A stretch of DNA of 64,000 nt from Macrostomum lignano (Eukaryota): NCBI GenBank assembly GCA_002269645.1, contig NIVC01002732.1, forward strand, positions 1 through 64,000, read 5' to 3'. This document shows, one piece after another, positions 1 to 51,222 of this stretch. Position numbers and translations under genes: made by a program. The notes below the pieces were generated by a model. It was given only the letters and a program-made list of their open reading frames with translations. It ran no database searches and had not been told where the DNA came from. Every line of letters begins with the position of its first letter. The first letter of the stretch is position 1.

Positions 1-233
<233 letters not shown>

Positions 234-2269: not shown

Positions 2270-2487
2270 TCCTTATAGCCAGATCTGCATGGCAACTCAA
2301 AGCCCAATAGCAACCTAAATCTGCAAAGCAACCCAGATTCGCATAGCAACCCAGATCCACATACCAGCCCCAGATCCGCATAGCAACTCCGGATCCGCAT
2401 AGCAACCCCAGATCCGCATAGCAACTCCAGATCCGCATAGCAACCCCAGATCCACATAGCAACCCCAGATCCGCATAGCAACCCATA
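2270..2487. repeat. 19-bp minisatellite (GCATAGCAACCCCAGATCC)n, intronic
   Basis: About 10 imperfect copies directly downstream (minus strand) of the PDE exon donor. Confidence 0.85.
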
Positions 2488-2503
2488 GTGCATGGCAACT
2501 CAC

Positions 2504-3531: not shown

Positions 3532-3632
3532 ATTTGCGGCCTTGTGCTTGATCTGGAATGTTGTTGGGGATTTAGAAAATGGAGTGTTGCATGAACTCTT
3601 GATGCCTATTTGTGACTGGGGTTTTAATCACG

Positions 3633-4342
3633 GATGTCTCTAGATGAGATTGGTGGCTACACGCCAGATGTCTCTAGATGAGATTGGTGGCTACACGCCA
3701 GATGTCTCTAGATGAGAGTAGTGGCAACACACCAGATATCTCTAGATGAGAGTAGTGGCTGCACACCAGATGTCTCTAGATGAGAGTAGTGGCTGCACAC
3801 CAGATGTCTCTAGATGAGAGTAGTGGCTACACACCAGATGTCTCTAGATGAGAGTAGTGGCTACACACCAGATGTCTCTAGATGAGAGTAGTGGCTACAC
3901 ACCAGATGTCTCTAGATGAGAGTAGTGGCAACACACCAGATATCTCTAGATGAGAGTAGTGGCTACACACCAGATGTCTCTAGATGAGAGTAGTGGCTAC
4001 ACACCAGATGTCTCTAGATGAGAGTAGTGGCTACACACCAGATGTCTCTAGATGAGAGTAGTGGCTACACACCAGATGTCTCTAGATGAGAGTAGTGGCT
4101 ACACACCAGATGTCTCTAGATGAGAGTAGTGGCTACACACCAGATGTCTCTAGATGAGAGTAGTGGCTACACACCAGATGTCTCTAGATGAGAGTAGTGG
4201 CTACACACCAGATGTCTCTAGATGAGAGTAGTGGCTACACACCAGATGTCTCTAGATGAGAGTAGTGGCTACACACCAGATGTCTCTAGATGAGAGTAGT
4301 GGCTACACACCAGATGTCTCTAGATGAGAGTAGTGGCTACAC
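3633..4342. repeat. 34-bp minisatellite (CAGATGTCTCTAGATGAGAGTAGTGGCTACACAC)n
   Basis: About 21 highly homogeneous copies; period 34 (3971 to 4005). Confidence 0.96.
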
Positions 4343-4609
4343 AAAATTATTTGGCATCGACAATATTGATTTTCGCTGAACGGCCCGTGACAGAAACTGA
4401 TCACTGTTAATTTGCTTGTAGCATAATTTATCAATACGAGAGAATAATGTATGACAAGTAGCTCTACGAAATCCTGAGATATTCTCGGCGATCTCCACTG
4501 ATTTATGGCCAACGCAGTAAAGAAAAATCTGGGATTACCTCGTAAAATAGAACTGACTTGCTTCTCGCTTTTATAGCAAAGTGTGGGATGCAATATATTT
4601 TGAAAATTC

Positions 4610-5630
<1,021 letters not shown>

Positions 5631-6017
5631 CACTATCAGGCCTAAAAATGCAGATCACTGCGGTGTATCAAATTTCTATAAAAAGCAATGGATTCGCGAT
5701 GGGCAACAAAAAAACAATATTTTTATTTCCTAATAAGGCTCTCACTCATAAACCTGTGATCCCAGTGAATTTATACACGAGCGTATAAATGGACTGCTAA
5801 TTAAACTTAATTAAACAAGTGCAGAATGCATCGATCCGCTATCTAGCAGTGCTTGCACTGGCTGCTCTAAAAATATTATCGATCTTGTTGGGCAATTCGG
5901 ATTGAAGAACTTTAGCAGCGATCACCACGGTCTCTCAGCCCCATCTTTCTTAGTTCGTTTCTACACCATGTCACTGACTGTCTCAAATTGGATCCCCCTA
6001 ATTCTGTCTTTCTCCCC

Positions 6018-6049
<32 letters not shown>

Positions 6050-6707
6050 CCCCTCATCTCAATTTTTCGTTGAACATTGAATCTCAAAGAAAGTTGCAAT
6101 CAACTTTAAAATACCACTGAATCCCACTGAAGACTTCTCTCCACAGCCTTTTATACAGCCTAAGCTCTGGGGCAGAGGAAAATTTATTTGCAACCAACAC
6201 TCAGAAAAAATCCAGACCAGATGTTGAGCACAGCAAAGGAGTCTCTGTAATCAATGCCTTCAGGCTTCCCCATCTCTGCATTCTCCCATCCCGATCCCGT
6301 GATCCGCAGATCCCCCGGCCAAGCGCCCACGCCGCAGCTGGGCCCCGGCCAGATCCTCTCCCTACCCACCCTCCGTAGCCGAATGAATATCCTTTATCCG
6401 TTTGCTCCCCTCTCCCAGCTCCCTCGAATCTTTTCCGCCTCATCAGTATCGATTATTTATGGCGGAGACTCTGACCCCCCCCCCTCGGAGGCCATCAAGC
6501 ATGCAACAACTAATAGGGTGAAAACTATTAACAGACCATTAGCGAATCATAACTGTTACTGGAGTATAGTAAGGAGTGACCTCAGTTGACCTGAGTTAAT
6601 CTTTGGTCTGAGAATGAGTTGAGGTATGAACTGCAAGGACAACTTAAGTAGAAGGACGCAACACTCGAAATCTCGCAACATTACGAGTGTAGCGCCCTAT
6701 ATATACA

Positions 6708-6885
6708 TATGTTACTTGAGTAGTCATTGACTCTCTGATGTGCGGCCCAGGCTCGATTCCAAGTGCAGTCAATTTGCGGCTAAATTGGAATCTCGGCTTG
6801 GCTCTGCTCGTGCAATCAGCGCCATTTGAGAGCCAACAACCCCTAAGGTACAGTGAAGTGTACATGCCTAACGATAAATAAAGTT
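6708..6885 (+). mobile_element. Possible degenerate tRNA-derived SINE
   Basis: A-box-like TACTTGAGTAGT (6713-6724) and B-box-like GGCTCGATTCC (6750-6760) at Pol III spacing; ends in an A-rich ATAAATAAA tail. Single copy in the window. Confidence 0.35.
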
Positions 6886-7082
6886 AGGGCCGCTGTGCAC
6901 TCCTGTGTGAGTGTGTGCCTGTGCGTATGACTGCGTACGTATCCGCGCGCTTGTGTGCCTGCTCAGGGGAGTCGGCGGAATGGGCAGCAATGCCTCTCGC
7001 CGGTTGTGTGACAATTTCGCTTGAAGTGCACCAGGTGTACACAGCCCCTGTCTCTAATACGAGCGCAAAAAACTACATAGAC

Positions 7083-8050
7083 TGAGGTGAAGAGTGACCC
7101 TAATGACCAGATTGACTGGGGTGAGGAGTGACCCAATGACCAGATTGACTGGGGTGAGGAGTGATCCCAATGACCAGATTGACTGGGGTGAGGAGTGATC
7201 CCAATGACCAGATTGACTGGGGTGAGGAGTGATCCCAATGACCAGATGGACTGGGGTGAGGAGTGACCCCAATTACCAGATGGATTGGGGTGAGGAGTGA
7301 TCCCAATGACCAGATGGACTGGGGTGAGGAGTGACCCCAATGACCAGATTGACTGGGGTGAGGAGTGACCCCAATGACCAGATGGACTGGGGTGAGGAGT
7401 GACCCCAATGACCAGATTGACTGGGGTGAGGAGTGATCCCAATGACCAGATGGACTGGGGTGAGGAGTGACCCCAATGACCAGATGGACTGGGGTGAGGA
7501 GTGACCCCAATGACCAGATTGACTGGGGTGAGGAGTGACCCCAATGACCAGATGGACTGGGGTGAGGAGTGACCCCAATTACCAGATGGATTGGGGTGAG
7601 GAGTGATCCCAATGACCAGATGGACTGGGGTGAGGAGTGACCCCAATTACCAGATGGATTGGGGTGAGGAGTGACCCCAATGACCAGATGGACTGGGGTG
7701 AGGAGTGACCCCAATTACCAGATGGATTGGGGTGAGGAGTGGTCCCAATGACCAGATGGATTGGGGGTGAGGAGTGACCCCAATGACCAGATGGACTGGG
7801 GTGAGGAGTGACCCCAATGACCAGATGGACTGGGGTGAGGAGTGACCCCAATGACCAGATGGACTGGGGTGAGGAGTGACCCCAATGACCAGATGGACTG
7901 GGGTGAGGAGTGACCCCAATGACCAGATGGACTGGGGTGAGGAGTGACCCCAATTACCAGATGGACTTGGGTGAGGAGTGACCCCAATTACCAGATGGAC
8001 TGGGGTGAGGAGTGACCCCAATGACCAGATGGACTGGGTGAGGAGTGCCA
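7083..8050. repeat. 34-bp minisatellite (GTGAGGAGTGACCCCAATGACCAGATGGACTGGG)n
   Basis: About 28 copies; period 34 (7801 to 7835). Confidence 0.96.
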
Positions 8051-8769
8051 CCAGTTATACGAAATAATGAATTAATTTAAATAGCAAAATATAGCATTAG
8101 CAATAAAATAGTAACTTACCGGAATCAGAATTTAATTCATTGCGGAATTAATTAGTAATAAGTAAATATATAGATATGCAGAGAACTGGAAGCGTGACAA
8201 GCGCCAATGGCAAACCCAGAACTGGCTTAGCGGACAGGGGAATTGGCGGCTTAAAAGAATAAGCGCAGAGGTGAGAAAAATTGATATTATTATTATTGTT
8301 ATTATTATTGGAGCTTGAGGAGCAGGGCGCAGGTCAACTAAGACTGTAGAGTGTAGTGGGACTTTTCTGGCTTATTTTATCCCCACTGCAGTTCGTTCAC
8401 CTCCTCCACCCCCTCCTCTCTCCGCCCTCCCTCCTCTCCTCTCTGTCCCCCACCCCTTGCCCTCCCCCACACCGGCTAAATCGCTTTGGAAATGAGGGCA
8501 GGAAGAGAGAGAGGTTAAAATGCAAAGGGAGGGGAGGAAGCGAACCTTGAAGAAAAATAGGGTGCAGTGCGTTCTCTTCGTCCCTGGGACTGGGGGGGGG
8601 GTCTGGTCCATGGGTCGGGCAGGCCTGGCTTTTTGTGGATACAGGAAGAAAAGAGGAAATCGCTGGCGGGTTAGCCAATCGAAGATGGAGATGGCGGAGG
8701 CTGAGGTCGTTGCTGTCGACAAGGCGAAAGAAACACAAAAAACTGCTGCCTAGTGTCGATTGGTTTCTG

Positions 8770-9140
8770 TTCTCTCCTGCTTTCTCCCTCACTCTCTACT
8801 CTCTCCCTCTACTCTCTTCTCTCTCTTCCTGACCCTCTACTCTCTCTCCTTCACTCTCTACTCTCTCTCCCTCACTCTCTACTCTCTCCCTCACTCTCTT
8901 CTCTCTCTTCCTGATCCTCTACTCTCTCTCCCTCACTCTCTACTCTCTCTCCCTCACTCTCTACTCTCTCCTTCACTCTCTACTCTCTCCCTCACTCTCT
9001 ACTCTCTCTCCCTCACTCTCTACTCTTACCCTCACTACCTACTCTCTCCCTCACTCTCTACTCTCTCCCTCACTCTCTACTCTCTCTCCCTCACTCTCTG
9101 CTCTTACCCTCACTCTCTACTCTCCCCCTCACTCTCTCTT
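8770..9140. repeat. CT-rich degenerate minisatellite (CTCACTCTCTACTCTCTCTCC-like)
   Basis: Units of 19-21 bp, pyrimidine-only apart from A. Confidence 0.85.
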
Positions 9141-9899
9141 CTAGCACTCCAATTTAAACTGGCACTCCTAACCCTAGTCACCTCTATACTGATACTCGTG
9201 CCCTTTTCAACTCGTATATTGATTAAGTATTCGAAAAACCAGCTTTAGTTAACTTCAGGCAGGCGGGGCAGGCTTGCAGGGCAGGCAAGCTGTTTTGCCT
9301 CTAACTAGCTTAGCATAACAGTGTATAGCCAACCCCGAGAGGGTAAGAGAGAGACCCCAGGCAGAAGAGCGAGCAGGGAGAAATGGGGGTGGGTGGATTT
9401 TCAGTCACATTTGACTTGTCCTCATCTCCGTGTTCCCAGCTCAGTGCATATTATGCACTGCCGCTCCTAAACCCCTTCCCTAACCTCTTCCCTCTGGAAC
9501 GTGTCCCCCAGCTGTCAAGCCAAATTGTATTTCAAGCCAAATGAACTGCACATAGGAAAGCTAACAGCCGTTTACCGACTCGCAAAGCATTCTCGTACAT
9601 ATGCATTGACTTACTCTTATTAGCTAGGTCTAAAAATAAAACGATCCATTTGTGGTCTTCTCGTGTGTTAATGGTCTTGGCGTATGCGGCTTTTTAAATA
9701 GGACTGGCAGGAAGAGAGTCCTCTTCTGTTCTGGTCTGGACAGATAAATTTTGTCCAAATAAATATTGCTTTAATGCCGTTAAAAATGACGTTAAAAATG
9801 ACAGCAATGAACAACCTTATTTCTGTGTTTTCATTCACAGGAGCGCCAAAATTTTGGCGTCAATTAAATTTGCTACTGCTGTTGTCTGAGCTCATGAAA

Positions 9900-11155
9900 A
9901 CAGCTGTAGCGTCCCTGACAACAGCATTAGGGTCTCCTGGCAGCAGCATTGGGGTCTCCTGACAACAGCTGTAGCGTCCCTGACAACAGCATTGGGGTCC
10001 CCTGATAACAGCATTAGGGTCTCCTGATAGCAGCTGTAGCGTCCCTGACAACAGCATTAGGGTCTCCTGATAACAGCATTAGGGTCTCCTGACAACAGCA
10101 TTAGGGTCTCCTGACAGCAGCTGTAGCGTCCCTGACAACAGCATTAGGGTCTCCTGATAGCAGCTGTAGCGTCCCTGACAACAGCATTAGGGTCTCCTGA
10201 TAGCAGCTGTAGCGTCCCTGACAACAGCATTAGGGTCTCCTGATAGCAGCTGTAGCGTCCCTGACAACAGCATTAGGGTCTCCTGATAGCAGCTGTAGCG
10301 TCCCTGACAACAGCATTAGGGTCTCCTGATAGCAGCTGTAGCGTCCCTGACAACAGCATTAGGGTCTCCTGACAGCAGCTGTAGCGTCCCTGACAACAGC
10401 ATTAGGGTCTCCTGCAGCAGCATTGGGTCTCCTGACAACAGCTGTAGCGTCCCTGACAACAGCATTGGGTCCCCTGATAACAGCATTAGGGTCTCCTGAT
10501 AGCAGCTGTAGCGTCCCTGACAACAGCATTAGGGTCTCCTGATAACAGCATTAGGGTCTCCTGACAACAGCATTAGGGTCTCCTGACAGCAGCTGTAGCG
10601 TCCCTGACAACAGCATTAGGGTCTCCTGATAGCAGCTGTAGCGTCCCTGACAACAGCATTAGGGTCTCCTGATAGCAGCTGTAGCGTCCCTGACAACAGC
10701 ATTAGGGTCTCCTGACAGCAGCTGTAGCGTCCCTGACAACAGCATTAGGGTCTCCTGGCAGCAGCATTGGGGTCTCCTGACAACAGCTGTAGCGTCCCTG
10801 ACAACAGCATTGGGGTCCCCTGATAACAGCATTAGGGTCTCCTGACTGCAGCTGTAGCGTCCCTGACAACAGCATTAGGGTCTCCTGATAACAGCATTAG
10901 GGTCTCCTGACAACAGCATTAGGGTCTCCTGACAGCAGCTGTAGCGTCCCTGACAACAGCATTAGGGTCTCCTGATAACAGCATTAGGGTCTCCTGACTG
11001 CAGCTGTAGCGTCCCTGACTGCAGCATTAGGGTCTCCTGACAGCAACTGTAGCGTCCCTGACAACAGCATTAGCATTAGGGCCTCCTGACAACATTAGTG
11101 TGTCGCTTCTAATGTAGCGTTCCTTGACAACGACGTTAAAGCCCCTGACAACATT
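9900..11155. repeat. Composite 43-bp minisatellite (CAGCTGTAGCGTCCCTGACAA + CAGCATTAGGGTCTCCTGATAG) with higher-order blocks
   Basis: Period 43 (10201 to 10244), built from two related 21/22-bp subunits; a marker block recurs near 9935, 10408 and 10752. Confidence 0.93.
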
Positions 11156-11534
11156 TATGTCGCCTGACAGTAACCACAGAAAAATACTGCAGCGTCTCGG
11201 AAAAAGCAGCAAAAAACTTACATTTATTCGCTCGCTATCGCAGAATCTGCTCCTAATAGCTCTTCTGGTTTTCCACGGGTTTCAGTTTCTACGCTTTCCG
11301 TTTTTTTAATGACGAGTTTCCTTTTTTACACAAGCTTAGCCAAGTCAAAAACTCCTTTGCGCAAACACGCAAACGCACAAAACTCTCTCTTTCATTTTCG
11401 TTTCCTAACTTTCGTGTACTTTTTCAGTTGTACTTGGCTGCGGCAGCAACATATTTACTGTTCTGCATGCAGATCAGACTTGTTTCTGATGCCGGTCACT
11501 GTGTGCGTTTTATTTGGACATGCAGAGACAGCGC

Positions 11535-11792
11535 AAGGGAGAGGGGAGAGAGAGGGAGAGAGGAGAGAGAGGGAGAGAGGAGAGAGAGGGAGAGAGGAGA
11601 GAGAGGGAGAGAGGAAAGTGAGAGGGAGAGAGGGGAGAGAGGGAGAGAGGAGAGAGAGGAAGAGAGGAGAGAGAGGGAGAGAGGAGAGAGGGAGAGAGGA
11701 GAGAAAGGGGGAGGGGAGAGAGAGGGAGAGAGGAAAGTGAGAGGGAGAGAGGAGAAAGGCGGAGAAGGAGATAGGGAGAGAGAGAGAGGGGG
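11535..11792. repeat. GA-rich low-complexity repeat
   Basis: GGGAGAGAGGAGAGA-type purine run. Confidence 0.9.
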
Positions 11793-12979
11793 AAATGATG
11801 GTTTTGTTTGCCAAATTGAAAATAGCAAATATAATAATTTTGATAGGTAAAGCTTGCTTATGCTTTTCGGTTGCATTTGCATTTGAACCTCTCTTTCTAT
11901 GCTTATTTCTGCTACTTAAATTGACATTTGCTCTCTTGTGCTCTTTACCCTCGAAAAAATGCTTTCTGTTTAGTAGGACCGACTATTTGTATCAGTGACT
12001 GCCTAATTGCAGATATCAGTTATCCTCTAACTAAGTTATAAGTTCCTCTTGATTCGCATATTTTTATTGCTGTTTCATTCTACGAAAGCAAAAAAAAGGA
12101 TTTAGCGAAATGTACTGTCGAGATAGGAAGCTTTCAGATTATGAAAAACAATTGAGCCTTTTGTTCTGAAACCAATCACATAACTATAATACGTACCTAC
12201 CAACAGACAACTCAGTTTTAGTATAGTGGACTAGCAAGTTGCGCCCCCCTTGGGGAGGCAGCAGCAAAGAAAAGAATAAAGATATTTAAATAGACTACAT
12301 CTATAGGATTCTGACCTTGCGTTGTGCAGCCACTGTTTTCAATTTTAAGGAAATGGTTAAAGCAAAAATGCATCCGGCCTGAAAGCCTAAAATAGCAGCT
12401 CCTCTGTGAGCTTTGGTTCAAAAGCCCCTGAGCAACTCCCATGAGCCTTGAAGTCTCAAAAATCCCTCATGATCCTTGTCATCTTAGCAGGTCCCCTCGT
12501 AAGCCTTAATAACTCCTGTAAGCCTTGGGATGCGGATTTGCTACATGGGAGGTTTCGCCATAGACTAATTCGATCAAGAAAAAAGGCGGCTTGAACAAAT
12601 GCACTAAAGAAGAGACAGGAACAGCTGAAATCTAGCCAGAACTTAGTAAAATTTTGCATAGTAAGTTCCATCTTTTTTAGGGCCAGCGAGTCAGTAACTC
12701 TGTGATTGCAGAGGATTTTTTCGACCAATATTTCTCTAACCGCTGCTAGGATGGGGATTTAAAGCAGAAAGGGCTGCATCAATCACCACCCAGGGCTACA
12801 CGAGAGAGAAGATTTATTGCATCAATGTGATTGTCTTGGGGGTGTCTGTGGTGATTGATCAGTGCTAGGAATTCTCTGTAGCATAGGGACGATCAGTGAA
12901 TTCTGAGCAAGTCAGGAGTATGCGGACTTTATGGATAGGCTTTCTGCAGACATTTTTATCTCATGTCGGTGATCAATGA

Positions 12980-13553: not shown

Positions 13554-13949
13554 GTGAGTGCGCACTTTGCACGAAAGTCTTCATTCGACTCTTCTACGAG
13601 CGTACAATGGAAATACGAAGTAAGAATTCTTTTCGGGATTTTTCTTAACATCAGACATCCTTGTTCCCAATGCAGACATCATATTTCCTAATGTCCGAAA
13701 TCATTGTTCCAAATCTTCAATCCGAAGGCAATTACTGCATCAACTTTGCGACTACACCTATATGAATCGAGACTGCCGTATCAGGAGTAACTCTGATATG
13801 CCTAGTATTAGGGGCAATAAAGTTACTGAACTTAATGTTACATCAACACTAGATAATAACGCCAGCTAATTCTCCAATTATTGCTTATTCTGATGCAAAT
13901 TTAGCTTTTTGCTCTTTGCTAGCTAGTCTCTTCAGGGCTGTCTTTACAG

Positions 13950-13957
13950 TATAAATA
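13950..13957 (+). promoter_or_regulatory. Candidate TATA box of insulin-like gene copy 1 (equivalent at 17200 and in all later copies)
   Basis: TATAAATA; homology between the divergent copy and the amplified copies begins about 30 bp upstream of it. Confidence 0.45.
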
Positions 13958-14245
13958 TATGCGTTTAAGACTACGAAAGGCATATGAAAATGGTTAAACT
14001 GTACTGACTCAGTGTGTACTTTTTGCCACACGCTGGAAAGCAGCGAAGCCATAGACGAGAGTAATAAAATTGAGAACAGATTTGACCATAGACAGTCTGC
14101 CGATTATTATATTCATCAATTGAAAAGCGGGACAGTCCTGGCATTCCTTGCTTACTCAGCAGAGCATCACTTTTATTACGAGAGCCAAGTTCGGACGATC
14201 ATTTCTTCAAGCAATTTGAGAGTGAAATCTTGAGATACTCCCAAG

Positions 14246-14553
14246 GTAAGATCGGGTATTTCTTGGACTAATTTAATTTTACAGTACAAGGGACAGAGCA
14301 CCTCAGCGGTAAAAGCTTCTGACCACCAGGCGCCACATTAATTTGGGGCATGTGTGCTTGAAGAAGAACGTCTCTGAGGGCCAACCCACAACGCTCAGAG
14401 AGTGTACATGTCTGACGATTAGAAATTGTGCAGTGCAGAATTGTGCAGAATGTGCAGAATTGCCTCGCGTTTGGTTGCGTGACGACGTGGACAAAGGCAT
14501 CCTGCAGTTATTTTATCATTTATATAACTTATTTCTTTGGTTACATTCCAAAG
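14246..14553 (+). other. Predicted 5'-UTR intron of insulin-like gene copy 1
   Basis: CAAG|GTAAGA donor; pyrimidine-rich tract then AAG|G ATG. Confidence 0.55.
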
Positions 14554-14554
14554 G

Positions 14555-14866
14555 ATGCTCAAACTGCTGGTCTGCCTATTGGCGATGGCCTCCATCAGCG
14601 GCTGCCAGGCAAATTCACCGTACAAAGGCAAATTTCTCTATTGCGGTTCGGGCGAACCCGGCATGATCCGCTGGCTCTGCGGGGCAATCAAACACCTGGA
14701 GAGCCTCGGTATCAAGGATGGCTACCTCGATCCGTCTAGAGGATACGTGCCGCTAGACGCTCCTCCGCCTTGGAAGAAGAGGTCTGTTCGGCAGATTCAC
14801 AGAACCCTCATTTTTTTGAGCTGCCGGCGAAAATTCGATGCCAGAGTGCTCTGTAGGGGCCACTGA
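14555..14866 (+). CDS. Insulin-like prepropeptide, divergent 4-Cys paralog (copy 1, 103 aa)
   Basis: Signal peptide MLKLLVCLLAMASISGCQA; B chain CG-x10-C (CGSGEPGMIRWLC); KKRSVR processing site; A chain LSCRRKFDARVLC aligns to LCCRRLCDARVFC of the paralogs; AATAAA at 15026. Confidence 0.8.
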   Translation: MLKLLVCLLAMASISGCQANSPYKGKFLYCGSGEPGMIRWLCGAIKHLESLGIKDGYLDPSRGYVPLDAPPPWKKRSVRQIHRTLIFLSCRRKFDARVLCRGH

Positions 14867-15083
14867 TACAAATTATCTAAGACATCAGAGAATCAACAGA
14901 AAGTCGTTATGAAACGATTTTGTTGATTACACACGCAAACTGCTGTTGAAAGTTTTGAATATACGGCCCTGTTTCTAATACTAGCATAAACTGTATTCTG
15001 CTATTCAAAAAGTACATTATTCTACAATAAATCACTATAAAACCCGAGTCTGCAAATTAAATGCAATCGCACAGCATAAGTAC

Positions 15084-16630
15084 AGTGGTGCTAATCTGGG
15101 GGAGTAGTGCTAATCTGGATAAGTGGTGCTAATCTGGGGAAGTGGTGCTAATCTAGATAAGTGGTGCTAAACTGGGGGAAATGGTGCTAATCTGGAGGGA
15201 GTGGTGCTAAGCTGGAGGGAGTGCTGCTAATCTGGATAAGTGGTGCTAAACTGGGGGAAATGGTGCTAATCTGGAGGGAGTGGTGCTAAGCTGGAGGGAG
15301 TGCTGCTAATCTGGATAAGTGGTGCTAATCTGGGGGAAGTGGTGCTAATCTGGAGGGAGTGGTGCTAATCTGGAGCAAGTGGTGCTAATCTGGGGGAAGT
15401 GGTGCTAATCTGGAGGGAGTGGTGCTAATCTGGAGGAAGTGGTGCTAATCTGGAGGGAGTGGTGCTAATCTGGATAAGTGGCGCTAATCTGGGGAAGTGG
15501 TGCTAATCTGGATAATGGTGCTAATCTGGGGGAAGTGGTGCTAATCTGGATAAGTGGTGCTAATCTGGGGGAAGTGGTGCTAATCTGGAGGGAGTGGTGC
15601 TAATCTGGATAAGTGGCGCTAATCTGGGGAAGTGGTGCTAATCTGGATAAGTGGTGCTAATCTGGGGGAAGTGGTGCTAATCTGGATAAGTGGCGCTAAT
15701 CTGGGGAAGTGGTGCTAATCTAGGGAAGTGGTGCTAATCTGGATAACTGGTGCTAATCTGGAGGGAGTGCTGCTAATCTGGATAAGTGGTGCTAATCTGG
15801 GGAAGTGGTGCTAATCTGGATAAGTGGTGCTAAACTGGGGGAAATGGTGCTAATCTGGAGGGAGTGGTGCTAAGCTGGAGGGTGTGCTGCTAATCTGGAT
15901 AAGTGGTGCTAATCTGGGGAAGTGGTGCTAATCTGGAGGGAGTGGTGCTAATCTGGAGCAAGTGGTGCTAATCTGGGGGAAGTGGTGCTAATCTGGAGGG
16001 AGTGGTGCTAATCTGGAGGAAGTGGTGCTAATCTGGGGGAAGTGGTGCTAATCTGGATAAGTGGTGCTAATCTGGAGGAAGTGGTGCTAATCTGGGGGAA
16101 GTGGTGCTAATCTGGATAAGTGGCGCTAATCTGGGGAAGTGGTGCTAATCTAGGGAAGTGGTGCTAATCTGGATAACTGGTGCTAATCTGGAGGGAGTGC
16201 TGCTAATCTGGATAAGTGGTGCTAATCTGGGGAAGTGGTGCTAATCTGGATAAGTGGTGCTAATCTGGGGGAAGTGGTGCTAATCTGGATAAGTGGCGCT
16301 AATCTGGGGAAGTGGTGCTAATCTAGGGAAGTGGTGCTAATCTGGATAACTGGTGCTAATCTGGAGGGAGTGCTGCTAATCTGGATAAGTGGTGCTAATC
16401 TGGGGAAGTGGTGCTAATCTGGAGGGAGTGGTGCTAATCTGGAGCAAGTGGTGCTAATCTGGGGGAAGTGGTGCTAATCTGGAGGGAGTGGTGCTAATCT
16501 GGAGGAAGTGGTGCTAATCTGGGGGAAGTGGTGCTAATCTGGATAAGTGGTGCTAATCTGGAGGACGTGGTGCTAATCTGGGGGAAGTGGTGCTAATCTG
16601 GATAAGTGGTGCTAATCTGGGGGAAGTGGT
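15084..16630 (+). repeat. G-rich 19-20 bp minisatellite (GTGGTGCTAATCTGGA/G...) of unit A
   Basis: Variant units ending GATAA, GGGGAA, GAGGGA; about 1.55 kb. Confidence 0.96.
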
Positions 16631-17797: not shown

Positions 17798-18178
17798 ATG
17801 TTCAAACTGCTGGTGTGCCTATTGGCGATGGCCTCCATTAGCTGCTGCCAGGCAAGCGCTGAGTCAAAGCACAAAGGCAAATTTCTCTATTGCGGTCCGG
17901 CCAGTCCCGTCATGATCGACTGGCTCTGCCGGTCAATCAAACACCTGGAGAGCTTCGGAGTCAAGGACGGTTACATCGATCCGGCTCAAGGATACCTGCC
18001 GCTAAGCGCTCCAGCGCCTTGGAAGAAGAGGTCTGTTCGGTCTATTGGATTAGATTACGGATTATGGGACCCACCATCGGCTCACCAGATCAACAGGCGC
18101 GGCATTCACGCGCATGTGGCCATGTCACTGTGCTGTCGGAGACTGTGTGATGCCAGGGTGTTCTGCAAAGGCTACTGA
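17798..18178 (+). CDS. Insulin-like prepropeptide, 6-Cys type (copy 2, 126 aa)
   Basis: Signal peptide MFKLLVCLLAMASISCCQA; B chain C-x11-C (YCGPASPVMIDWLC); KKR and RR sites; A chain starting GI with CC-x3-C-x5-C. True ATG at 17798 (the ORF track starts at an upstream TTG). Confidence 0.88.
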   Translation: MFKLLVCLLAMASISCCQASAESKHKGKFLYCGPASPVMIDWLCRSIKHLESFGVKDGYIDPAQGYLPLSAPAPWKKRSVRSIGLDYGLWDPPSAHQINRRGIHAHVAMSLCCRRLCDARVFCKGY

Positions 18179-19675: not shown

Positions 19676-21792
19676 AGTGGTGCTAATCTGGGGGAAATGG
19701 TGCCAATCTGGAGGGAGTAGTGCTAATCTGGAGGGAGTAGTGCTAATCTGGAGGGAGTAGTGCTAATCTGGAGGGAGTAGTGCTAATCTGGAGGGAGTGA
19801 TGCTAATCTGGAGGGAGTGGTGCTAATCTGGGGGAAATTGTGCTAATCTGGAGGGAGTAGTGCTAATCTGGAGGGAGTAGTGCTAATCTGGAGGGAGTAG
19901 TGCTAATCTGGAGGGAGTAGTGCTAATCTGGAGGGAGTGATGCTAATCTGGAGGGAGTGGTGCTAATCTGGATAAGTGGTGCTAATCTTGATAAGTGATG
20001 CTAATCTGGGGGAAATGGTGCTAATCTGGAGGGAGTGTTGCTAATCAGGAGGGAGTGGTGCTAATCTGGAGGGAGTGTTGCTAATCTGGAGGGAGTGTTG
20101 CTAATCTGGATAAGTGGTGCTAAACTGGGGGAAATGGTGCTAATCTGGAGTGGTGCTAATCTGGAGGGAGTGTTGCTAATCTGGAGGGAGTGGTGCTAAT
20201 CTAGAGGGAGTGCTGCTAATCTGGATAAGTGGTGCTAATCTGGATAAGTGGTGCTAAACTGGGGGAAATGGTGCTAATCTGGAGGGAGCAGTGCTAATCT
20301 GGAGGGAGTGGTGCTAATCTGGAGGGAGTGGTGCTAATCTGGATAAGTGGTGCTAATCTGGGGAAGTGCTGCTAATCTGGATAAGTGGTGCTAAACTGGG
20401 GGAAATGGTGCTAATCTGGATGGAGCAGTGCTAATCTGGAGGGAGCAGTGCTAATCTGGAGGGAGCAGTGCTAATCTGGAGGGAGCAGTGCTAATCTGGA
20501 GGGAGTGTTGCTAATCTGGAGGGAGTGATGCTAAGCTGGAGGGAGTGCTGCTAATCTGGATAAGTGGTGCTAAACTGGGGGAAATGGTGCAAATCTGGAG
20601 AGAGTGGTGCTAATCTGGATAAGTGGTGCTAAACTGGGGGAAATGGTGCTAATCTGGATGGAGCAGTGCTAATCTAGAGGGAGTAGTGCTAATCTGGAGG
20701 GAGCAGTGCTAATCTGGAGGGAGCAGTGCTAATCTGGAGGGAGCAGTGCTAATCTGGAGGGAGTAGTGCTAATCTAATCTGGGGGAAGTGGTGCTAATCT
20801 GGGGGAAGTGGTGCTAATCTGGAGGGAGTGGTGCTAATCTGGAGAGAGTGGTGCTAAGCTGGAGGGAGTGGTGCTAATCTGGATAAGTGGTGCTAATCTG
20901 GGGAAGTGGTGCTAATCTGGATAAGTAGTGCTAATCTGGATAAGTGGTGCTAATCTGGGGAAGTGGTGCTAAACTGGGGGAAATGGTGCAAATCTGGAGA
21001 GAGTGGTGCTAATCTGGATAAGTGGTGCTAAACTGGGGGAAATGGTGCTAGTCTGGAGGGAGTGGTGCTAATCTGGAGGGAGCAGTGCTAATCTGGAGGG
21101 AGTGGTGCTAATCTGGAGGGAGTGATGCTAAGCTGGAGGGAGTGGTGCTAAGCTGGAGGGAGTGGTGCTAAACTGGAGGGAGTGGTGCTAATCTGGATAA
21201 GTGGTGCTAAACTGGGGGAAATGGTGCTAATCTGGAGGGAGTGGTGCTAATCTGGGGGAAGTGGTGCTAATCTGGATAAGTGGTGCTAATCTGGATAAGT
21301 GGTGCTAAACTGGGGGAAATGGTGCTAATCTGGAGGGAGTGGTGCTAAGCTGGAGGGAGTGCTGCTAATCTGGATAAGTGGTGCTAATCTGGGGAAGTGG
21401 TGCTAATCTGGGGGCAGTGGTGCTAATCTGGAGGGAGTGGTGCTAATCTGGAGAGAGTGGTGCTAATCTGGGGAAGTGGTGCTAATCTGGGGGAAGTGGT
21501 GCTAATCTGGGGGAAGTGGTGCTAATCTGGAGGGAGTGGTGCTAATCTGGAGAGAGTGGTGCTAAGCTGGAGGGAGTGGTGCTAATCTGGATAAGTGGTG
21601 CTAATCTGGGGAAGTGGTGCTAATCTGGATAAGTGGTGCTAAGCTGGGGAAGTGGTGCTAATCTGGATAAGTGGTGCTAATCTGGGGGAAGTGGTGCTAA
21701 TCTGGATAAGTGGTGCTAATCTGGATAAGTGGTGCTAATCTGGGGGAAGTGGTGCTAATCTGGATAAGTGGTGCTAATCTGGGGGAAGTGGT
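19676..21792 (+). repeat. G-rich minisatellite of unit B
   Basis: Same family as 15084-16630; about 2.1 kb. Confidence 0.96.
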
Positions 21793-23323: not shown

Positions 23324-25344
23324 TAGGAATTAGCTAAGACTAAATTATAGCTAAGCAGAGAATCAAACTGAAAGTCATGAATCGTTTTGTTGATTAAAAT
23401 ACATGTTTAACTGCTTTCGAAAGTTAACATTTCCAGTTTTTAAAGTTATCATAAATCGCATTCACTTATTAAAAGTTTTAAATTAATCTATACCATAATC
23501 TACACCATAAAGCCCAATCTGCAAATTTATGAACTCACTTGCACAGCATAGCTAGTTTTATTAAATGGCCTGCATACTCTTGAACATTCCTGTCTGAAAA
23601 GTGACCCCCCCTTGGCTGTCTAGCAAGGGACACACCTGTCTAGGGGCAGAGTAGTCCAAATCTCGTGCTACAATCCCTGATTCGATTCATTTTAATCATT
23701 GGTTACATATGTATTTGTACATATATACACTTATATGTACACAGCTTTTATTTCGCAGCAATACATGCATTTTTATGCACGAATAAAAATTTCTGGCTGG
23801 GGTTTTATCGTGCGATTCACGTACGCCCCCCCATAGTCAGAAAGTGTAAAATGAACGTACTGACGATCAGAAGATATTCAGAGTCACAGCTGCACACGCG
23901 ACCCGCTGCTATATGAGCGTGTGTTACGCATACATGTATGTTCCACATGATGAATCGTCTGTAGTAAACCATGCACGGGCTAGCTAATACATTTAAATGT
24001 GAGCAAGAGTCAGATTGATGGGTAATAATTGCCTCTCTGTTGGTTGCGAGACGACGTAGCGGAAAGCGTTGCTCCAGTTTGCCAAACCCCCTATGTGATT
24101 TACATGTACGTGTACACATGTACATGTATGTGCAACACTTGTACGCAAGTCCAAGCATAACTCAATTGCATGGTTTTCACACATTTAACTGTAGAACCAT
24201 AGTCGTACGGCTCGTACATGGCTCAGCTTGAGCTTACTATTTTAAATTGGATTGGATATGAAAATTCTGCACCGGTTACCGTTTGTACCAAGGACCACTG
24301 TATATAGCTATATACAGTGGTCCTTGGTTTGTACATAGACAAAGTAATCTATTGAATTGGAATTCAACTTACAATTTTCAAGCAAACTTCACATTAACTA
24401 GAAAAGAAACACTAAGATCGATTGTGGAATCAACTTAATAGGTACTTAAAATATTATGTGATCAGGCAAACTCGAATTTATAAAATTGTGAAAAATGGGA
24501 CTTATACATAAACCTTGTTATAGTGTAATTACATTCGACTCGCTATTTTAAATTCGAAAGTCATGATATTCGATTTCGAAATTAAATAGAATTTTAGCCG
24601 GATCCATAGCCAATAGAAAACGGGTTCCGGTGCCGGAACTCTAGCCATTACCTATATTATATAGCCTACTGACTTGTATTGTCATAAATCATGTGATGGC
24701 CCTAGGCTAGCCTGGCTAGGTTTAGGTAGGCTTATTACGTATAACATTTTTTACTTTTGACATTTGTTTCAGTTTATAAAACCCGAGTCTGCAAATTAAA
24801 TGCAATCGCACAGCATAAGTACAGTGGTGCTAATCTGGGGGAAATGGTGCTAATCTGGAGGGAGTGGGGCTAAACTGGGGAAATTGTGCTAATCTGGAGG
24901 GAGCAGTGCTAATCTGGATAAGTGGTGCTAATCTGGATAAGTGATGCTAAACTGGGGGAAATGGTGCTAATCTGGAGAGAGTGGTGCTAAGTTGGAGGGA
25001 GTGCTGCTAATCTGGATAAGTGATGCTAATCTGGATAAGTGGTGCTAAACTGGGGGAAATGGTGCTAATCTGGAGGGAGCAGTGCTAATCTGGAGGGAGT
25101 AGTGCTAATCTGGAGGGAGCAGTGCTAATCTGCAGGGAGTAGTGCTAATCTGGAGGGAGCAGTGCTAATCTTGAGGGAGCAGTGCTAATCTGGAGGGAGT
25201 AGTGCTAATCTGGAGGGAGCAGTGCTAATCTGGAGGGAGTGCTGCTAATCTGGAGAGAGCAGTGCTAATCTGGAGGGAGTAGTGCTAATCTGGAGGGAGC
25301 AGTGCTAATCTGGAGGGAGCAGTGCTAATCTGGACTGGAGGGAG

Positions 25345-25560
25345 TGTTGTATACCGATCCGAATCCAATGTACTTTGATTTTCAGTCGTTGCCCCAGCGT
25401 TAATTTATTTGTCTGTGTCCCAAACAGCTACCGACTGACTCTGACTCTATAAAGGCTTGCCGTTACTTATATCGTTAAATAAAATATACATTCAACTTAG
25501 GCTACGCTCTCGTTATAACAGCTTTCGGCTCAGCACAGAGTCAAAGCACAAAACACAACA
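25345..25560 (+). repeat. 5' LTR
   Basis: Matches 29541-29756 with no difference seen by eye; contains TATAAA and AATAAA. Confidence 0.97.
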
Positions 25561-27008
25561 ATGGCGTCGCAGTCACTTGGCCAACTGCCGCTGGAGAAGC
25601 CCGATCGAGCTCAAACCTGGATGACTGCCTTCCAAGCGCTGGCCCGAGCAAAGGACTGGACTGATAGTGATGGAAAGAAGACCATCGCAGACAACTTTTT
25701 GGCGCACTGCGGGCTCACAGCCTTGGAGAAGATACAAAGCATAATCGCCCCCAAATCCGTGACCGACCTGACTTTCGATGAAATCAACACTGCCGTGCAA
25801 GCGTACCTAAAGCCAAAGGAAAAGCTGGTCATCGCTGAACGCGTTCGTTTCTTCGCCATGCGGCAAGCACCAAATGAATCAATTTCTGACTTCGTTAGCC
25901 GACTTCGTCGTGCCGCTAAGGACTGTAAGTTTGATGATTTGAAGACATCCACCAGTCCTCTCGAGGAACTGCTCCAAATGGCGCTAATTTCTGGGCTCAG
26001 CAATGTAAACCAACAACAACGCGTTCTGGAAGCCACTCAAATCAAATCATTTAAGTCCGTTCCCGAAATTGTCGACTTTATTCGCGACCTAGAGCAGGTG
26101 ACAGCTTTTGTGTCCATAAAATCAAGCGACTTTCAAGCGACTTTGACTCAGCCAGCTCCTTCAATCCAAACACACGAAGCCTCTGTGCATTACTCGCAGC
26201 GACATAATGGACATCGGAGTGTCAAGGACTGTCGTTACTGCGGCAAAGCACATTCGAAAGGAAAATGCCCGGCTTTTGGCAAGCTCTGTTCAAAATGTGG
26301 TAAGAAAAATCACTTCGCCAGTGTATGTCGCTCATCATCTGCACGGCCTGTGCACCAAGTCACTGACCCATCAGCTCATGAAATAGACAATGAGCCACAT
26401 GAGAAGACTTCTCTGATGCATCTCAGCGACGTGGGCACCGTCCACGCTGTCAACGTGGCCACCGAGCCACTTATTATCGATGGCAAGACCGTCGACATGC
26501 AGATCGATACAGGCGTCTCTGTCTCCGTGCTCTCCAGTTCGCAATGGGAACGACTGGGTCGACCCTCGCTGCAGAAGTGTTTTCGGCGGCTAGAAGCCTT
26601 TGATGGTCACGTGATGAAATCACTCGGAAAGCTGGCAACCACGGTTGAACTACGAGGTCATCTGCACCCTGCAGAACTCATTGTGGTCAACTCGAGCAAA
26701 CCATATGGCTTACTTGGTCGCGATCTGTTGGACGCGGATGACCTCTTTCACACCACAAGTGTGCCCCAGAACAACACCCGCGTAGTTGAGCCACTGCCTA
26801 CCATAAAAGGCGTGAAAGCTCGCATGGAGGTTGTTGACGGTGCCAGACCCAGATTCTGCCGTGCTCGATCCGTGCCTATTGCAATTGAGGGGCAGATTAA
26901 CGCCGAACTCGACCGCTTGCAACAGCTAGGAATAATTGAACCCATCGAGGGACCCGTGAGCAATGCGTCGCCCGTGGTGTGGGTGAAAAAGAAAGATGGC
27001 ACCTTGCG
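25561..27008 (+). CDS. gag-pol: Gag (two Zn knuckles) - aspartic protease - start of RT
   Basis: CRYCGKAHSKGKC and CSKCGKKNHFASVC knuckles; IDTG protease motif; ASPVVWVKKKDGTLR RT motif; frame lost near 27009. Confidence 0.93.
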
Positions 27009-29403: not shown

Positions 29404-29540
29404 ATTCCAAACTTTCAACGAATTCGCCGTTACTTTGTTAAGCACCAAGCTCCCTAAGCTCATCCGTTCATACTCAAACCCACTAATCAATAACCACCAA
29501 CGCTTTTCCGTTGCAGTTCTCATTCCCTCGAAGGGGGACA

Positions 29541-32443: not shown

Positions 32444-32824
32444 ATGTTCAAACTGCTGGTCTGCCTATTGGCGATGGCCTCCATTAGCTGCTGCCAGGCA
32501 AGCGCTGAGTCAAAGCACAAAGGCAAATTTCTCTATTGCGGTCCGGCCAGTCCCGTCATGATCGACTGGCTCTGCCGGTCAATCAAACACCTGGAGAGCT
32601 TCGGAGTCAAGGACGGCTACATCGATCCGGCTCAAGGATACCTGCCGCTAAGCGCTCCGGCGCCTTGGAAGAAGAGGTCTGTTCGGTCTATTGGATTAGA
32701 TTACGGATTATGGGACCCACCATCGGCTCACCAGATCAACAGGCGCGGCATTCACGCGCATGTGGCCATGTCACTGTGCTGTCGGAGACTGTGTGATGCC
32801 AGGGTGTTCTGCAAAGGCTACTGA
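32444..32824 (+). CDS. Insulin-like prepropeptide, 6-Cys type (copy 4, 126 aa)
   Basis: Protein identical to copy 2. Confidence 0.88.
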   Translation: MFKLLVCLLAMASISCCQASAESKHKGKFLYCGPASPVMIDWLCRSIKHLESFGVKDGYIDPAQGYLPLSAPAPWKKRSVRSIGLDYGLWDPPSAHQINRRGIHAHVAMSLCCRRLCDARVFCKGY

Positions 32825-36729: not shown

Positions 36730-37110
36730 ATGTTCAAACTGCTGGTGTGCCTATTGGCGATGGCCTCCATTAGCTGCTGCCAGGCAAGCGCTGAGTCAAA
36801 GCACAAAGGCAAATTTCTCTATTGCGGTCCGGCCAGTCCCGTCATGATCGACTGGCTCTGCCGGTCAATCAAACACCTGGAGAGCTTCGGAGTCAAGGAC
36901 GGTTACATCGATCCGGCTCAAGGATACCTGCCGCTAAGCGCTCCGGCGCCTTGGAAGAAGAGGTCTGTTCGGTCTATTGGATTAGATTACGGATTATGGG
37001 ACCCACCATCGGCTCACCAGATCAACAGGCGCGGCATTCACGCGCATGTGGCCATGTCACTGTGCTGTCGGAGACTGTGTGATGCCAGGGTGTTCTGCAA
37101 AGGCTACTGA
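36730..37110 (+). CDS. Insulin-like prepropeptide, 6-Cys type (copy 5, 126 aa)
   Basis: Protein identical to copy 2. Confidence 0.88.
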   Translation: MFKLLVCLLAMASISCCQASAESKHKGKFLYCGPASPVMIDWLCRSIKHLESFGVKDGYIDPAQGYLPLSAPAPWKKRSVRSIGLDYGLWDPPSAHQINRRGIHAHVAMSLCCRRLCDARVFCKGY

Positions 37111-40920: not shown

Positions 40921-41301
40921 ATGTTCAAACTGCTGGTGTGCCTATTGGCGATGGCCTCCATTAGCTGCTGCCAGGCAAGCGCTGAGTCAAAGCACAAAGG
41001 CAAATTTCTCTATTGCGGTCCGGCCAGTCCCGTCATGATCGACTGGCTCTGCCGGTCAATCAAACACCTGGAGAGCTTCGGAGTCAAGGACGGTTACATC
41101 GATCCGGCTCAAGGATACCTGCCGCTAAGCGCTCCGGCGCCTTGGAAGAAGAGGTCTGTTCGGTCTATTGGATTAGATTACGGATTATGGGACCCACCAT
41201 CGGCTCACCAGATCAACAGGCGCGGCATTCACGCGCATGTGGCCATGTCACTGTGCTGTCGGAGACTGTGTGATGCCAGGGTGTTCTGCAAAGGCTACTG
41301 A
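40921..41301 (+). CDS. Insulin-like prepropeptide, 6-Cys type (copy 6, 126 aa)
   Basis: Protein identical to copy 2; CDS appears identical to copy 5. Confidence 0.88.
   Translation: MFKLLVCLLAMASISCCQASAESKHKGKFLYCGPASPVMIDWLCRSIKHLESFGVKDGYIDPAQGYLPLSAPAPWKKRSVRSIGLDYGLWDPPSAHQINRRGIHAHVAMSLCCRRLCDARVFCKGY

Positions 41302-47404: not shown

Positions 47405-47790
<386 letters not shown>

Positions 47791-51157: not shown

Positions 51158-51222
<65 letters not shown>

What the first reader, a model, noticed from the sequence alone, without database searches (positions are those of the whole stretch)
14555..14866. Divergent paralog has lost exactly the two cysteines of the intra-A-chain disulfide
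Seen: SLCCRRLCDARVFC (copies 2-6) aligns ungapped to FLSCRRKFDARVLC (copy 1); the first Cys is Ser and the third is Phe. Established: in insulin these positions (A6, A11) pair with each other, while A7-B7 and A20-B19 are inter-chain; C. elegans type-alpha insulins also lack this bond. Inference: the paired loss supports the insulin connectivity and implies a folded, selected two-disulfide variant rather than a decaying pseudogene. The frame also survives three in-frame length differences (2, 15 and 6 codons).
Basis: partly seen in the sequence, partly recalled or inferred. Interest (0 to 1): 0.85.

Follow-up and report, generated by a model that had tools for sequence, protein, structure and literature searches.

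The report
Divergent edge copy of flatworm insulin-like array
A flatworm (Macrostomum lignano) carries a tandem array of an unannotated secreted-peptide gene whose cysteines are laid out like insulin's, and the odd first copy has lost one cysteine pair with its reading frame intact, but it evolves almost as fast as neutral DNA, so it is not shown to be a selected two-disulfide hormone.

Summary
The window is Macrostomum lignano contig NIVC01002732.1. The ORF at 14555-14866 (103 aa) is a diverged paralog of five protein-identical 126-aa ORFs. It has Ser and Phe where they have the first and third Cys of CC-x3-C-x5-C, and it differs by in-frame gaps of 2, 15 and 6 codons.

The family looks like an insulin-type prohormone: signal peptide, C-G-x10-C, and dibasic sites flanking a hypervariable disordered linker. 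B and A domains have dN/dS 0.035 against paralog P0002. But it fails every statistical test of insulin membership (Pfam, PDB sequences, profile comparison, Foldseek), and the last A-chain spacing is 5, not 8.

On copy 1's own lineage there are 36 nonsynonymous and 9 synonymous changes (omega about 1.2), against 5 and 7 on the sister lineage. Cysteines were lost at the background rate (3 of 9 versus 30 of 103 residues). The RR processing site and the predicted N-terminal A helix are gone, and no gene model exists. A near-identical copy on a second contig is frameshifted as assembled, probably by PacBio error.

For coding constraint: no stop (P 0.18) and three in-frame deletions (P about 0.04). 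My verdict is a fast-evolving, possibly still coding edge paralog; a pseudogene is not excluded.

The parts
13896..14554 (+). Upstream region of copy 1 shared with the array units. The block 13950-14350 is 94-96.5% identical to the upstream blocks of copies 2-6. 14350-14500 is diverged (63-76%). The last ~55 nt before the ATG are about 90% identical.
14521..14527 (+). TATATAA box 28-34 nt upstream of the ATG, conserved in copy 1 and copy 2 (candidate core promoter; function inferred)
14555..14866 (+). Copy 1 ORF, 103 aa plus stop: the divergent paralog
14555..14611 (+). Predicted signal peptide MLKLLVCLLAMASISGCQA. The cleavage site is inferred from the hydrophobic core and the small residues at -3/-1.
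   Evidence: (hydropathy), inference
14612..14782 (+). B-like domain (aa 20-76). It contains Cys30-Gly31-x10-Cys42, a predicted helix, a beta-hairpin extension and the KKR tribasic site (14774-14782).
14783..14863 (+). Shortened linker plus A-like segment SVRQIHRTLIFLSCRRKFDARVLCRGH. Ser89 is at 14819-14821 and Phe94 at 14834-14836, replacing the two cysteines. The RR site is lost (RT).
17798..18178 (+). Copy 2 ORF, 126 aa
22943..23323 (+). Copy 3 ORF, 126 aa, protein identical to copy 2
32444..32824 (+). Copy 4 ORF, 126 aa, protein identical to copy 2
36730..37110 (+). Copy 5 ORF, 126 aa, protein identical to copy 2
40921..41301 (+). Copy 6 ORF, 126 aa, protein identical to copy 2
15084..16630 (.). 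20-bp minisatellite (AGTGGTGCTAATCTGG...) that follows copy 1. Equivalent arrays follow copies 2-5 and probably mediate unequal exchange (inference).

Best explanation
Copy 1 is the 5'-edge member of a tandem array of a Macrostomum-restricted secreted prohormone-like gene. The family precursor reads: signal peptide; a 'B' domain with Cys-Gly-x10-Cys in and before a helix, plus a conserved beta-hairpin tail; a KKR site; a hypervariable disordered linker; an RR/KR site; and an 'A' peptide GIHAHVAMSLCCRR(L/M)CDARVFCKGY. This layout works like an insulin or relaxin-type two-chain peptide, but homology to insulin is not demonstrated.

Copy 1 is a mosaic. Its upstream block has been homogenised with the array, its B domain is moderately diverged, and its A segment and 3'UTR are strongly diverged. 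Along its own lineage it lost most of the linker (15 codons), six codons of the A-peptide N-terminus, the RR cleavage site and the Cys pair equivalent to A6/A11. It took about seven times more amino-acid replacements than its sisters (omega about 1.2).

The most likely reading is that it still encodes a secreted product. That product would be cleaved once at KKR or not at all, and held by the two remaining putative inter-segment disulfides. It would be evolving under strongly relaxed or diversifying selection rather than under the tight constraint of copies 2-6.

Shown: the sequence facts, the substitution counts, the lack of database homology and the AF2 secondary structure. Inferred: processing, disulfide connectivity, expression and function.
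For: Organism and array.

Family under strong constraint: the five array copies differ at 5 sites, all synonymous. B+A domains of copy 2 against paralog P0002 give dN/dS 0.035 at dS 0.63, while the linker is saturated at both kinds of site.

Prohormone layout: the sequence shows C-G-x10-C, CC-x3-C-x5-C and the KKR and RR/KR sites. AF2 gives the linker pLDDT below 50 and the B domain pLDDT 81-94. The order of elements is strand, helix, hairpin, then helix-turn-helix.

Copy 1 coding constraint: no stop codon (P=0.18 for 45 random substitutions). There are three deletions of 6, 45 and 18 nt, all in frame, and free DNA alignment recovers the two larger ones. Their joint probability under neutrality is about 0.007. 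The two cysteines lost from the mature part form one putative bonded pair (1 in 5 by chance), and that pair is the one dispensable for proinsulin folding (PMC8514764). The TATA-containing proximal region and the 400-nt upstream block are kept like those of the array copies. AF2 predicts the same B-domain structure for copy 1 with pLDDT 83-95.
Against: Lineage-polarised changes are 36 N: 9 S on copy 1 (omega about 1.2, indistinguishable from neutrality, p=0.73) against 5 N: 7 S on the sister lineage (Fisher p=0.025). In the B domain omega is 1.2 pairwise. Cysteines were lost at the background replacement rate: 3 of 9 against 30 of 103 residues. Hydrophobic positions are not significantly better preserved than in neutral simulations (p=0.13). 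The exact protein is absent from a 15-billion-protein collection, whereas the neighbours are present, so the transcript-evidence-based Mlig_3_7 annotation has no gene model for it. The near-identical copy on contig NIVC01002081.1 stops after 36 codons as assembled. AF2 no longer predicts the N-terminal A helix. The AF2 alignments have only 3 sequences, so the models are not independent evidence.
Confidence: 0.45

Rival explanations
1. Copy 1 is a young or slowly decaying pseudogene at the edge of the array. It escaped concerted evolution, lost constraint, and its cysteine losses, linker deletion and processing-site loss are neutral decay. The open frame is luck plus the short time elapsed.
For: Omega is about 1.2 on its lineage, not different from 1. 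Cys loss is at the background rate. There is no significant preservation of hydrophobic positions. No gene model exists in a transcript-based annotation although five neighbours have one. The second-contig copy is frameshifted as assembled. P(no stop)=0.18 alone is unremarkable.
Against: Three independent deletions are all multiples of three (about 0.04), and together with no stop the probability is about 0.007. The lost Cys are exactly one putative pair. In the A segment pairwise dN is below dS (Fisher p=0.007), although much of that constraint may lie on the sister lineage. The upstream and core promoter region is kept. The frameshifts on the other contig have an error-like signature. From 14403 to 15100 there are 13 small indels against 7 substitutions, whereas the array units show 5 indels against 33 substitutions per 2.7 kb. 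The indels also lie exactly where the two contigs are otherwise identical, so short-read Pilon polishing could not place reads there.
Confidence: 0.4
2. The family is not an insulin-superfamily member at all. It would be a lineage-specific secreted cysteine-containing protein whose Cys pattern resembles insulin by convergence. The paired loss in copy 1 would then only say that the two neighbouring cysteines (i, i+5) bond to each other locally. This rival concerns family identity and can hold together with either reading of copy 1.
For: No Pfam hit even at E up to 10, for the full precursors and for trimmed B+A constructs. No PDB sequence hit. An exhaustive HMM search of 1.84 billion representatives finds only the M. 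lignano paralog and one spurious repeat protein. hhalign against nine insulin, IGF, relaxin and bombyxin sequences gives 5% probability. Foldseek finds nothing with E<=0.001 (the best E-values are 0.69 in PDB and 1.9 in BFVD). The last Cys spacing is 5, not 8. The predicted B helix starts 5 residues after the first Cys and runs 8 residues past the second. A 31-residue, highly conserved hairpin tail follows, which insulin B chains lack.
Against: The combination is specific. There are exactly six mature cysteines, 2+4. C-G-x10-C has the invariant Gly. CC-x3-C-[D]-x3-[F] fits the insulin A-chain signature up to the last Cys (PROSITE PS00262 as I recall it). The A peptide starts with Gly-Ile directly after a dibasic site. 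The linker is hypervariable and disordered between dibasic sites. Insulin-like peptides are notoriously hard to detect by profile methods. Foldseek is weak on very small proteins, and PDB insulins are split into two chains.
Confidence: 0.4

Closest known systems
Insulin/IGF/relaxin superfamily precursors (Pfam PF00049), including flatworm ILPs such as SjILP/SmILP
   Same: Signal peptide. B segment with Cys-Gly-x10-Cys around a helix. Dibasic sites flanking a variable connecting peptide. A segment beginning Gly-Ile with CC-x3-C...C. Six cysteines in the mature part. Tandem gene amplification, as in bombyxins and nematode ins clusters.
   Different: No significant sequence, profile or fold match. 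The last A-chain spacing is x5 instead of x8, whereas schistosome ILPs keep x8 (PMC5391603). There is a long conserved hairpin extension after the second B cysteine. There is no intron in the connecting peptide.
C. elegans alpha-type insulin-like peptides (from my own knowledge of Pierce et al. 2001; the paper was not retrievable here)
   Same: Natural members of an insulin-like family that lack the A6-A11 intrachain bond.
   Different: Alpha-type peptides compensate with an extra interchain disulfide and so keep three bonds. Copy 1 has no compensating cysteines (four in the mature part). It also lost part of the A-chain N-terminus and one processing site.
Engineered des-[A6-A11] insulin/proinsulin analogues
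   Same: Pairwise removal of this cystine is the best tolerated of the three. A20-B19 and A7-B7, but not A6-A11, are needed for folding and ER exit (PMC8514764).
   Different: Those are laboratory variants of a bona fide insulin, with reduced stability and activity. Here neither the fold nor any activity is known.
Divergent edge copies and pseudogenes of tandem arrays under concerted evolution
   Same: Position at the array edge. Sisters homogenised to protein identity. Mosaic identity: upstream 94-96%, CDS 81%, 3'UTR about 58%. Omega close to 1.
   Different: The ORF is intact and all three deletions are in frame, which is unusual for a plain pseudogene.

Membership tests
Insulin/IGF/relaxin superfamily | Significant match to the family profile (Pfam PF00049 Insulin) | tested here: not met
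   No Pfam family at E up to 10 for copy 1, for copy 2, or for trimmed B+A, B-only and A-only constructs. hhalign against nine superfamily sequences: probability 5%, P=0.0076, covering only the CC-x3-C stretch.
Insulin/IGF/relaxin superfamily | A-chain signature CC-x3-C-x8-C | tested here: not met
   Copies 2-6 and P0002/P0004 have CC-x3-C-x5-C. Copy 1 has SC-x3-F-x5-C.
Insulin/IGF/relaxin superfamily | B-chain C-x11-C with Gly directly after the first Cys | tested here: met
   YCGPASPVMIDWLC in copies 2-6 and YCGSGEPGMIRWLC in copy 1.
Insulin/IGF/relaxin superfamily | Precursor order signal - B - dibasic - variable C peptide - dibasic - A | tested here: met
   The KKR and RR/KR sites flank a linker that is unalignable between copy 2 and P0002 (dN 1.16). 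The flanking B+A domains have omega 0.035. The linker has pLDDT below 50. Actual cleavage was not tested. In copy 1 the second site is lost (RT).
Insulin/IGF/relaxin superfamily | Insulin fold (B helix packed against two A helices) | tested here: inconclusive
   The AF2 secondary-structure order is compatible: helix 37-52, then helices 95-115 and 119-122. Foldseek finds no insulin, IGF or any other match with E<=0.001 in PDB or BFVD.
Insulin/IGF/relaxin superfamily | Disulfide connectivity A6-A11, A7-B7, A20-B19 | not testable with these tools
   The only indirect hint is the joint loss of the two cysteines at the A6- and A11-equivalent positions in copy 1, which has a 1 in 5 chance expectation.
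Insulin/IGF/relaxin superfamily | Signals through an insulin-receptor-type kinase or a relaxin-type GPCR | not testable with these tools
C. elegans alpha-type ILPs | Loss of A6-A11 compensated by an additional interchain cysteine pair | tested here: not met
   The copy 1 mature part has only four cysteines (C30, C42, C90, C100) and no new ones.
Pseudogene | Stop codons or frameshifts in the copy | tested here: not met
   The window copy is open from ATG to TGA with all three gaps in frame. The copy on contig NIVC01002081.1 is frameshifted as assembled, but with an error-like pattern.
Pseudogene | dN/dS not different from 1 on its own lineage | tested here: met
   36 N: 9 S against a neutral expectation of 77% N, p=0.73. 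The sister lineage has 5 N: 7 S, p=0.009.

The most novel reading that the evidence does not exclude
The family is a real but highly derived, Macrostomum-specific branch of the insulin superfamily. Its last A-chain cysteine has moved one helical turn (x5 instead of x8), and its B chain carries a conserved beta-hairpin extension. Copy 1 would be a naturally selected, two-disulfide, single-cleavage paralog that arose under positive selection on the B-domain surface. It would then be a natural experiment on the minimal disulfide set of an insulin-type fold.
Probability: 0.2. Interest if true: 0.6.

Novelty: new variant of a known kind. Interest (0 to 1): 0.35.

Why it matters
If confirmed, the array would be a previously unrecognised insulin-type hormone family in a regenerating flatworm model. 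All members are currently annotated 'hypothetical protein'. The family would have an unusual cysteine spacing, and copy 1 would show that the intrachain bond can be shed in nature without compensation. As things stand, the practical value is more modest. It gives a candidate peptide-hormone family for M. lignano, and a clear example of a tandem array in which the edge copy escaped concerted evolution. It is also a caution that 'paired cysteine loss' alone does not demonstrate selection.

Tried and rejected
- Pfam scans of the full and trimmed proteins gave nothing relevant.
- The PDB sequence search with the family profile gave nothing.
- The exhaustive HMM search of 1.84 billion representatives returned only paralog P0002 and P0006. 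P0006 is a 2211-aa repeat protein that matches a 16-residue motif many times, so I rejected it as spurious.
- Foldseek of the copy-2 model against PDB and BFVD gave only insignificant thioredoxin/GPX-like beta-alpha fragments.
- Searching main texts and four papers' supplements for the gene identifier Mlig028676 to obtain expression data found nothing. One of the four papers held no supplements at all.
- The literature search for a described M. lignano insulin-like peptide found none.
- Rfam and tRNA scans of the array, run to explain the highly conserved upstream block as an RNA gene, found nothing.
- A test for preferential retention of hydrophobic positions in copy 1 was not significant.
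- The first repeat finder was swamped by minisatellites and was replaced by BLAST self-comparison.
- Ortholog searches in other Macrostomum species were not possible. The DNA collections on offer are viral, metagenomic or prokaryotic, and the protein collections hold only M. lignano members.

Full report
**Origin of the window.** The 126-aa protein encoded five times in the window is found only in Macrostomum lignano assembly GCA_002269645.1. The window corresponds to positions 1-64000 of contig NIVC01002732.1. This is a free-living flatworm, so the bacterial-style ORF list is only a mechanical aid.

**The observation.** The ORF at 14555-14866 encodes MLKLLVCLLAMASISGCQANSPYKGKFLYCGSGEPGMIRWLCGAIKHLESLGIKDGYLDPSRGYVPLDAPPPWKKRSVRQIHRTLIFLSCRRKFDARVLCRGH. 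Five ORFs starting at 17798, 22943, 32444, 36730 and 40921 all encode the same 126-aa protein, which ends ...RRGIHAHVAMSLCCRRLCDARVFCKGY.

The C-terminal 14 residues align without gaps. The first Cys of the CC doublet is Ser in copy 1 (TGC to AGC), and the third Cys is Phe (TGT to TTC). The three length differences are 2, 15 and 6 codons. An unconstrained DNA alignment recovers the 45-nt and 18-nt gaps at codon boundaries as one of three co-optimal solutions.

- A third Cys, in the signal peptide, is also lost.
- The Leu-Cys to Lys-Phe change is a cluster of 5 changed bases in 6.
- The RR site in front of the A peptide has become RT.

**What the family is.** The only relatives in 5.8 billion clustered proteins and in 1.84 billion representatives are M. 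lignano paralogs:
- P0002 and P0004 (141-143 aa), named 'hypothetical protein BOX15_Mlig028676g1/g2/g4'.
- Two mis-predicted UniProt models, P0003 and P0005.

P0006 is a spurious repeat match.

The comparison of copy 2 with the P0002 gene is informative. The B-like domain (KGKF...WKKR) and the A-like peptide together have dN/dS 0.035 at dS 0.63. The stretch between the KKR and RR/KR sites is unalignable and saturated at both kinds of site. The five array copies differ at five nucleotide sites, all synonymous third positions.

AlphaFold2 was run on a three-sequence alignment, so the model deserves caution. Its results for copy 2 are:
- The B domain has pLDDT 81-94, with a strand at 29-31, a helix at 37-52 and a hairpin at 58-67.
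- The linker is disordered.
- The A peptide forms a long helix that ends at the CC doublet, then a turn with the third Cys, then a one-turn helix before the last Cys.

Several features work like an insulin or relaxin-type prohormone:
- a signal peptide;
- Cys-Gly-x10-Cys;
- a hypervariable connecting peptide between dibasic sites;
- an A peptide that begins Gly-Ile;
- a 2+4 cysteine layout.

**Membership in the insulin superfamily.** Membership is a separate question, and the tests do not support it:
- Pfam gives no hit at E up to 10 for full or trimmed sequences.
- The family profile hits no PDB sequence.
- hhalign against nine insulin, IGF, relaxin and bombyxin sequences gives 5% probability.
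- Foldseek finds nothing significant in PDB or BFVD.
- The A-chain spacing is CC-x3-C-x5-C, three residues short of the canonical x8. Known flatworm ILPs keep x8 (PMC5391603).
- The B domain carries a conserved 31-residue tail that insulin lacks.

Small disulfide-rich hormones often escape such tests, and I could not run a positive control. I therefore put homology to insulin at roughly 0.55-0.6, not more.

**Architecture of the locus.** Each unit consists of about 650 nt of upstream sequence, the intronless ORF, a 3' region, and a 20-bp minisatellite of 0.5-2.1 kb. A Ty3/gypsy-type retroelement remnant splits the minisatellite between copies 3 and 4, which explains the 9.5-kb spacing there. 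Copy 1 sits at the 5' edge of the array.

Its similarity to the array falls from 5' to 3':
- The upstream block 13950-14350 is 94-96.5% identical, as similar as the array units are to each other.
- The CDS is about 81% identical.
- The 3'UTR is about 58% identical.

Synonymous differences are 8 per 52 sites in the signal and B part, but 11 per 19 in the linker and A part (Fisher p=0.0007). The P0002 locus shares only the CDS, so the upstream similarity reflects recent homogenisation, not deep constraint. I infer that gene conversion or unequal exchange has overwritten the 5' side of an older divergent paralog. One caveat applies: the copy 2 to P0002 comparison also shows higher dS in the A part (p=0.017), so part of the heterogeneity may be regional.

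**Is copy 1 selected or decaying? Evidence for relaxed or absent constraint.**
- With the P0002 gene as outgroup, 36 nonsynonymous and 9 synonymous changes map to the copy-1 lineage. Only 5 and 7 map to the sister lineage.
- With about 3.4 nonsynonymous sites per synonymous site, this gives omega of about 1.2 for copy 1. That is not different from neutrality (p=0.73). The sister has about 0.2 (p=0.009), and the two lineages differ (Fisher p=0.025).
- The pairwise value of 0.60 hides this asymmetry.
- Three of nine cysteines are replaced against 30 of 103 residues overall, so cysteines are not specially protected.
- Hydrophobic positions are not significantly better kept than in neutral simulations (p=0.13).
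- AF2 keeps the B domain for copy 1 (pLDDT 83-95) but no longer predicts the N-terminal A helix.
- The exact 103-aa protein is absent from the 15-billion-protein collection, although its five neighbours are present. The Mlig_3_7 annotation is built from transcript evidence (PMC5730564). This hints at low or no expression.

**Is copy 1 selected or decaying? Evidence for coding constraint.**
- Only 18% of neutral simulations with 45 substitutions stay free of stops.
- Three independent deletions that are all multiples of three have a chance of about 0.04. The joint probability is about 0.007.
- The two cysteines lost from the mature part are one putative bonded pair, which happens 1 time in 5 by chance. 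That pair is the one whose removal proinsulin tolerates best (PMC8514764).
- Within the A segment, pairwise dN is below dS (p=0.007). Much of that constraint may belong to the sister lineage, however.

**The other haplotype or duplicate contig.** Contig NIVC01002081.1 (loci L006 and L007) carries two intact 126-aa copies and a copy-1 homolog at L007:2576-2877. Within the copy-1 CDS it differs from the window copy by:
- one substitution (Gly16 back to Cys);
- a +1/-1 indel pair;
- deletions of 1, 1, 2 and 1 nt.

As assembled, it stops after 36 codons.

The pattern argues for assembly error, however. From 14403 to 15100 there are 13 small indels against 7 substitutions. The array units of the same contig show 5 indels against 33 substitutions per 2.7 kb. 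The indel-rich stretch is also exactly where the two contigs are otherwise identical. Mlig_3_7 is a Canu PacBio assembly polished only with short reads by Pilon, and it contains 180 Mb of near-identical duplicate blocks. Multi-mapping reads would leave one duplicate unpolished. I treat this point as unresolved but probably technical.

**Verdict.** The sequence facts are right. The insulin-type reading of the family is reasonable as a mechanism but unproven as membership. The claim that the paired cysteine loss 'implies a folded, selected two-disulfide variant' goes beyond the data.

Copy 1 is best described as a fast-evolving edge paralog whose frame has been kept. I assign these rough probabilities:
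- about 0.45 that it is a still-coding gene under relaxed or diversifying selection;
- about 0.40 that it is a young pseudogene;

The decisive data are copy-specific RNA-seq coverage, raw-read support for the frameshifts, orthologs in other Macrostomum species, and disulfide mapping. None of these is reachable with the tools here.

Noticed in passing
window 15084-16630, 19676-21792, 24823-25334, 29756-31284, 34323-35580, 38610-39771: A 20-bp minisatellite (AGTGGTGCTAATCTGGAGGG) of 0.5-2.1 kb follows gene copies 1-5. Its length differs between units and between the two contigs, so it is a likely substrate for unequal exchange.
   Followed up: partly
window 25334-29756: A Ty3/gypsy-type LTR retroelement remnant is inserted in the minisatellite between copies 3 and 4. 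It has a gag-aspartyl protease ORF at 25561-27036, an RT-RNaseH ORF at 26979-28589 and an integrase ORF at 28250-28795, in different frames. It explains the 9.5-kb spacing.
   Followed up: partly
window 13950-14350 versus 14555-15083: Mosaic divergence of copy 1. The upstream block is 94-96.5% identical to the array, the CDS 81% and the 3'UTR about 58%. Synonymous divergence is significantly higher in the linker and A part than in the signal and B part (p=0.0007). This suggests a gene-conversion boundary inside or just upstream of the gene.
   Followed up: yes
L007:2576-2877 (NIVC01002081.1, about 127.7-128.0 kb): A second contig holds a near-identical copy-1 homolog with five 1-2-nt deletions and one 1-nt insertion but only one substitution. 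It is broken as assembled, with a pattern typical of unpolished PacBio sequence in a duplicated block. That contig shows only two intact 126-aa copies, against five here.
   Followed up: partly
window 14831-14836: The Leu-Cys to Lys-Phe replacement is CTGTGT to AAATTC, with five of six adjacent bases changed. It looks like a multinucleotide event rather than independent point mutations. Such clusters inflate dN.
   Followed up: no
L008:10001-10869: Paralog P0002 (Mlig028676 g2/g4) has a 10-nt first coding exon (ATGGGTAACG) and an intron of about 470 nt inside the signal-peptide region. It lies as a single copy next to a VWA-domain gene. The array copies are intronless, with their own ATG.
   Followed up: partly
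window 1-12000 and 46000-64000: The flanks of the array are dominated by unrelated micro- and minisatellites. Examples are a 34-bp unit at 3633-4343 and 7080-8047, (TAGA)n at 4610-5630, a 43/65-bp unit at 9891-11073, a 22-bp unit at 48366-49284 and a 32-bp unit x78 at 56224-58714. The long ORFs listed there are repeat translations, not genes.
   Followed up: no
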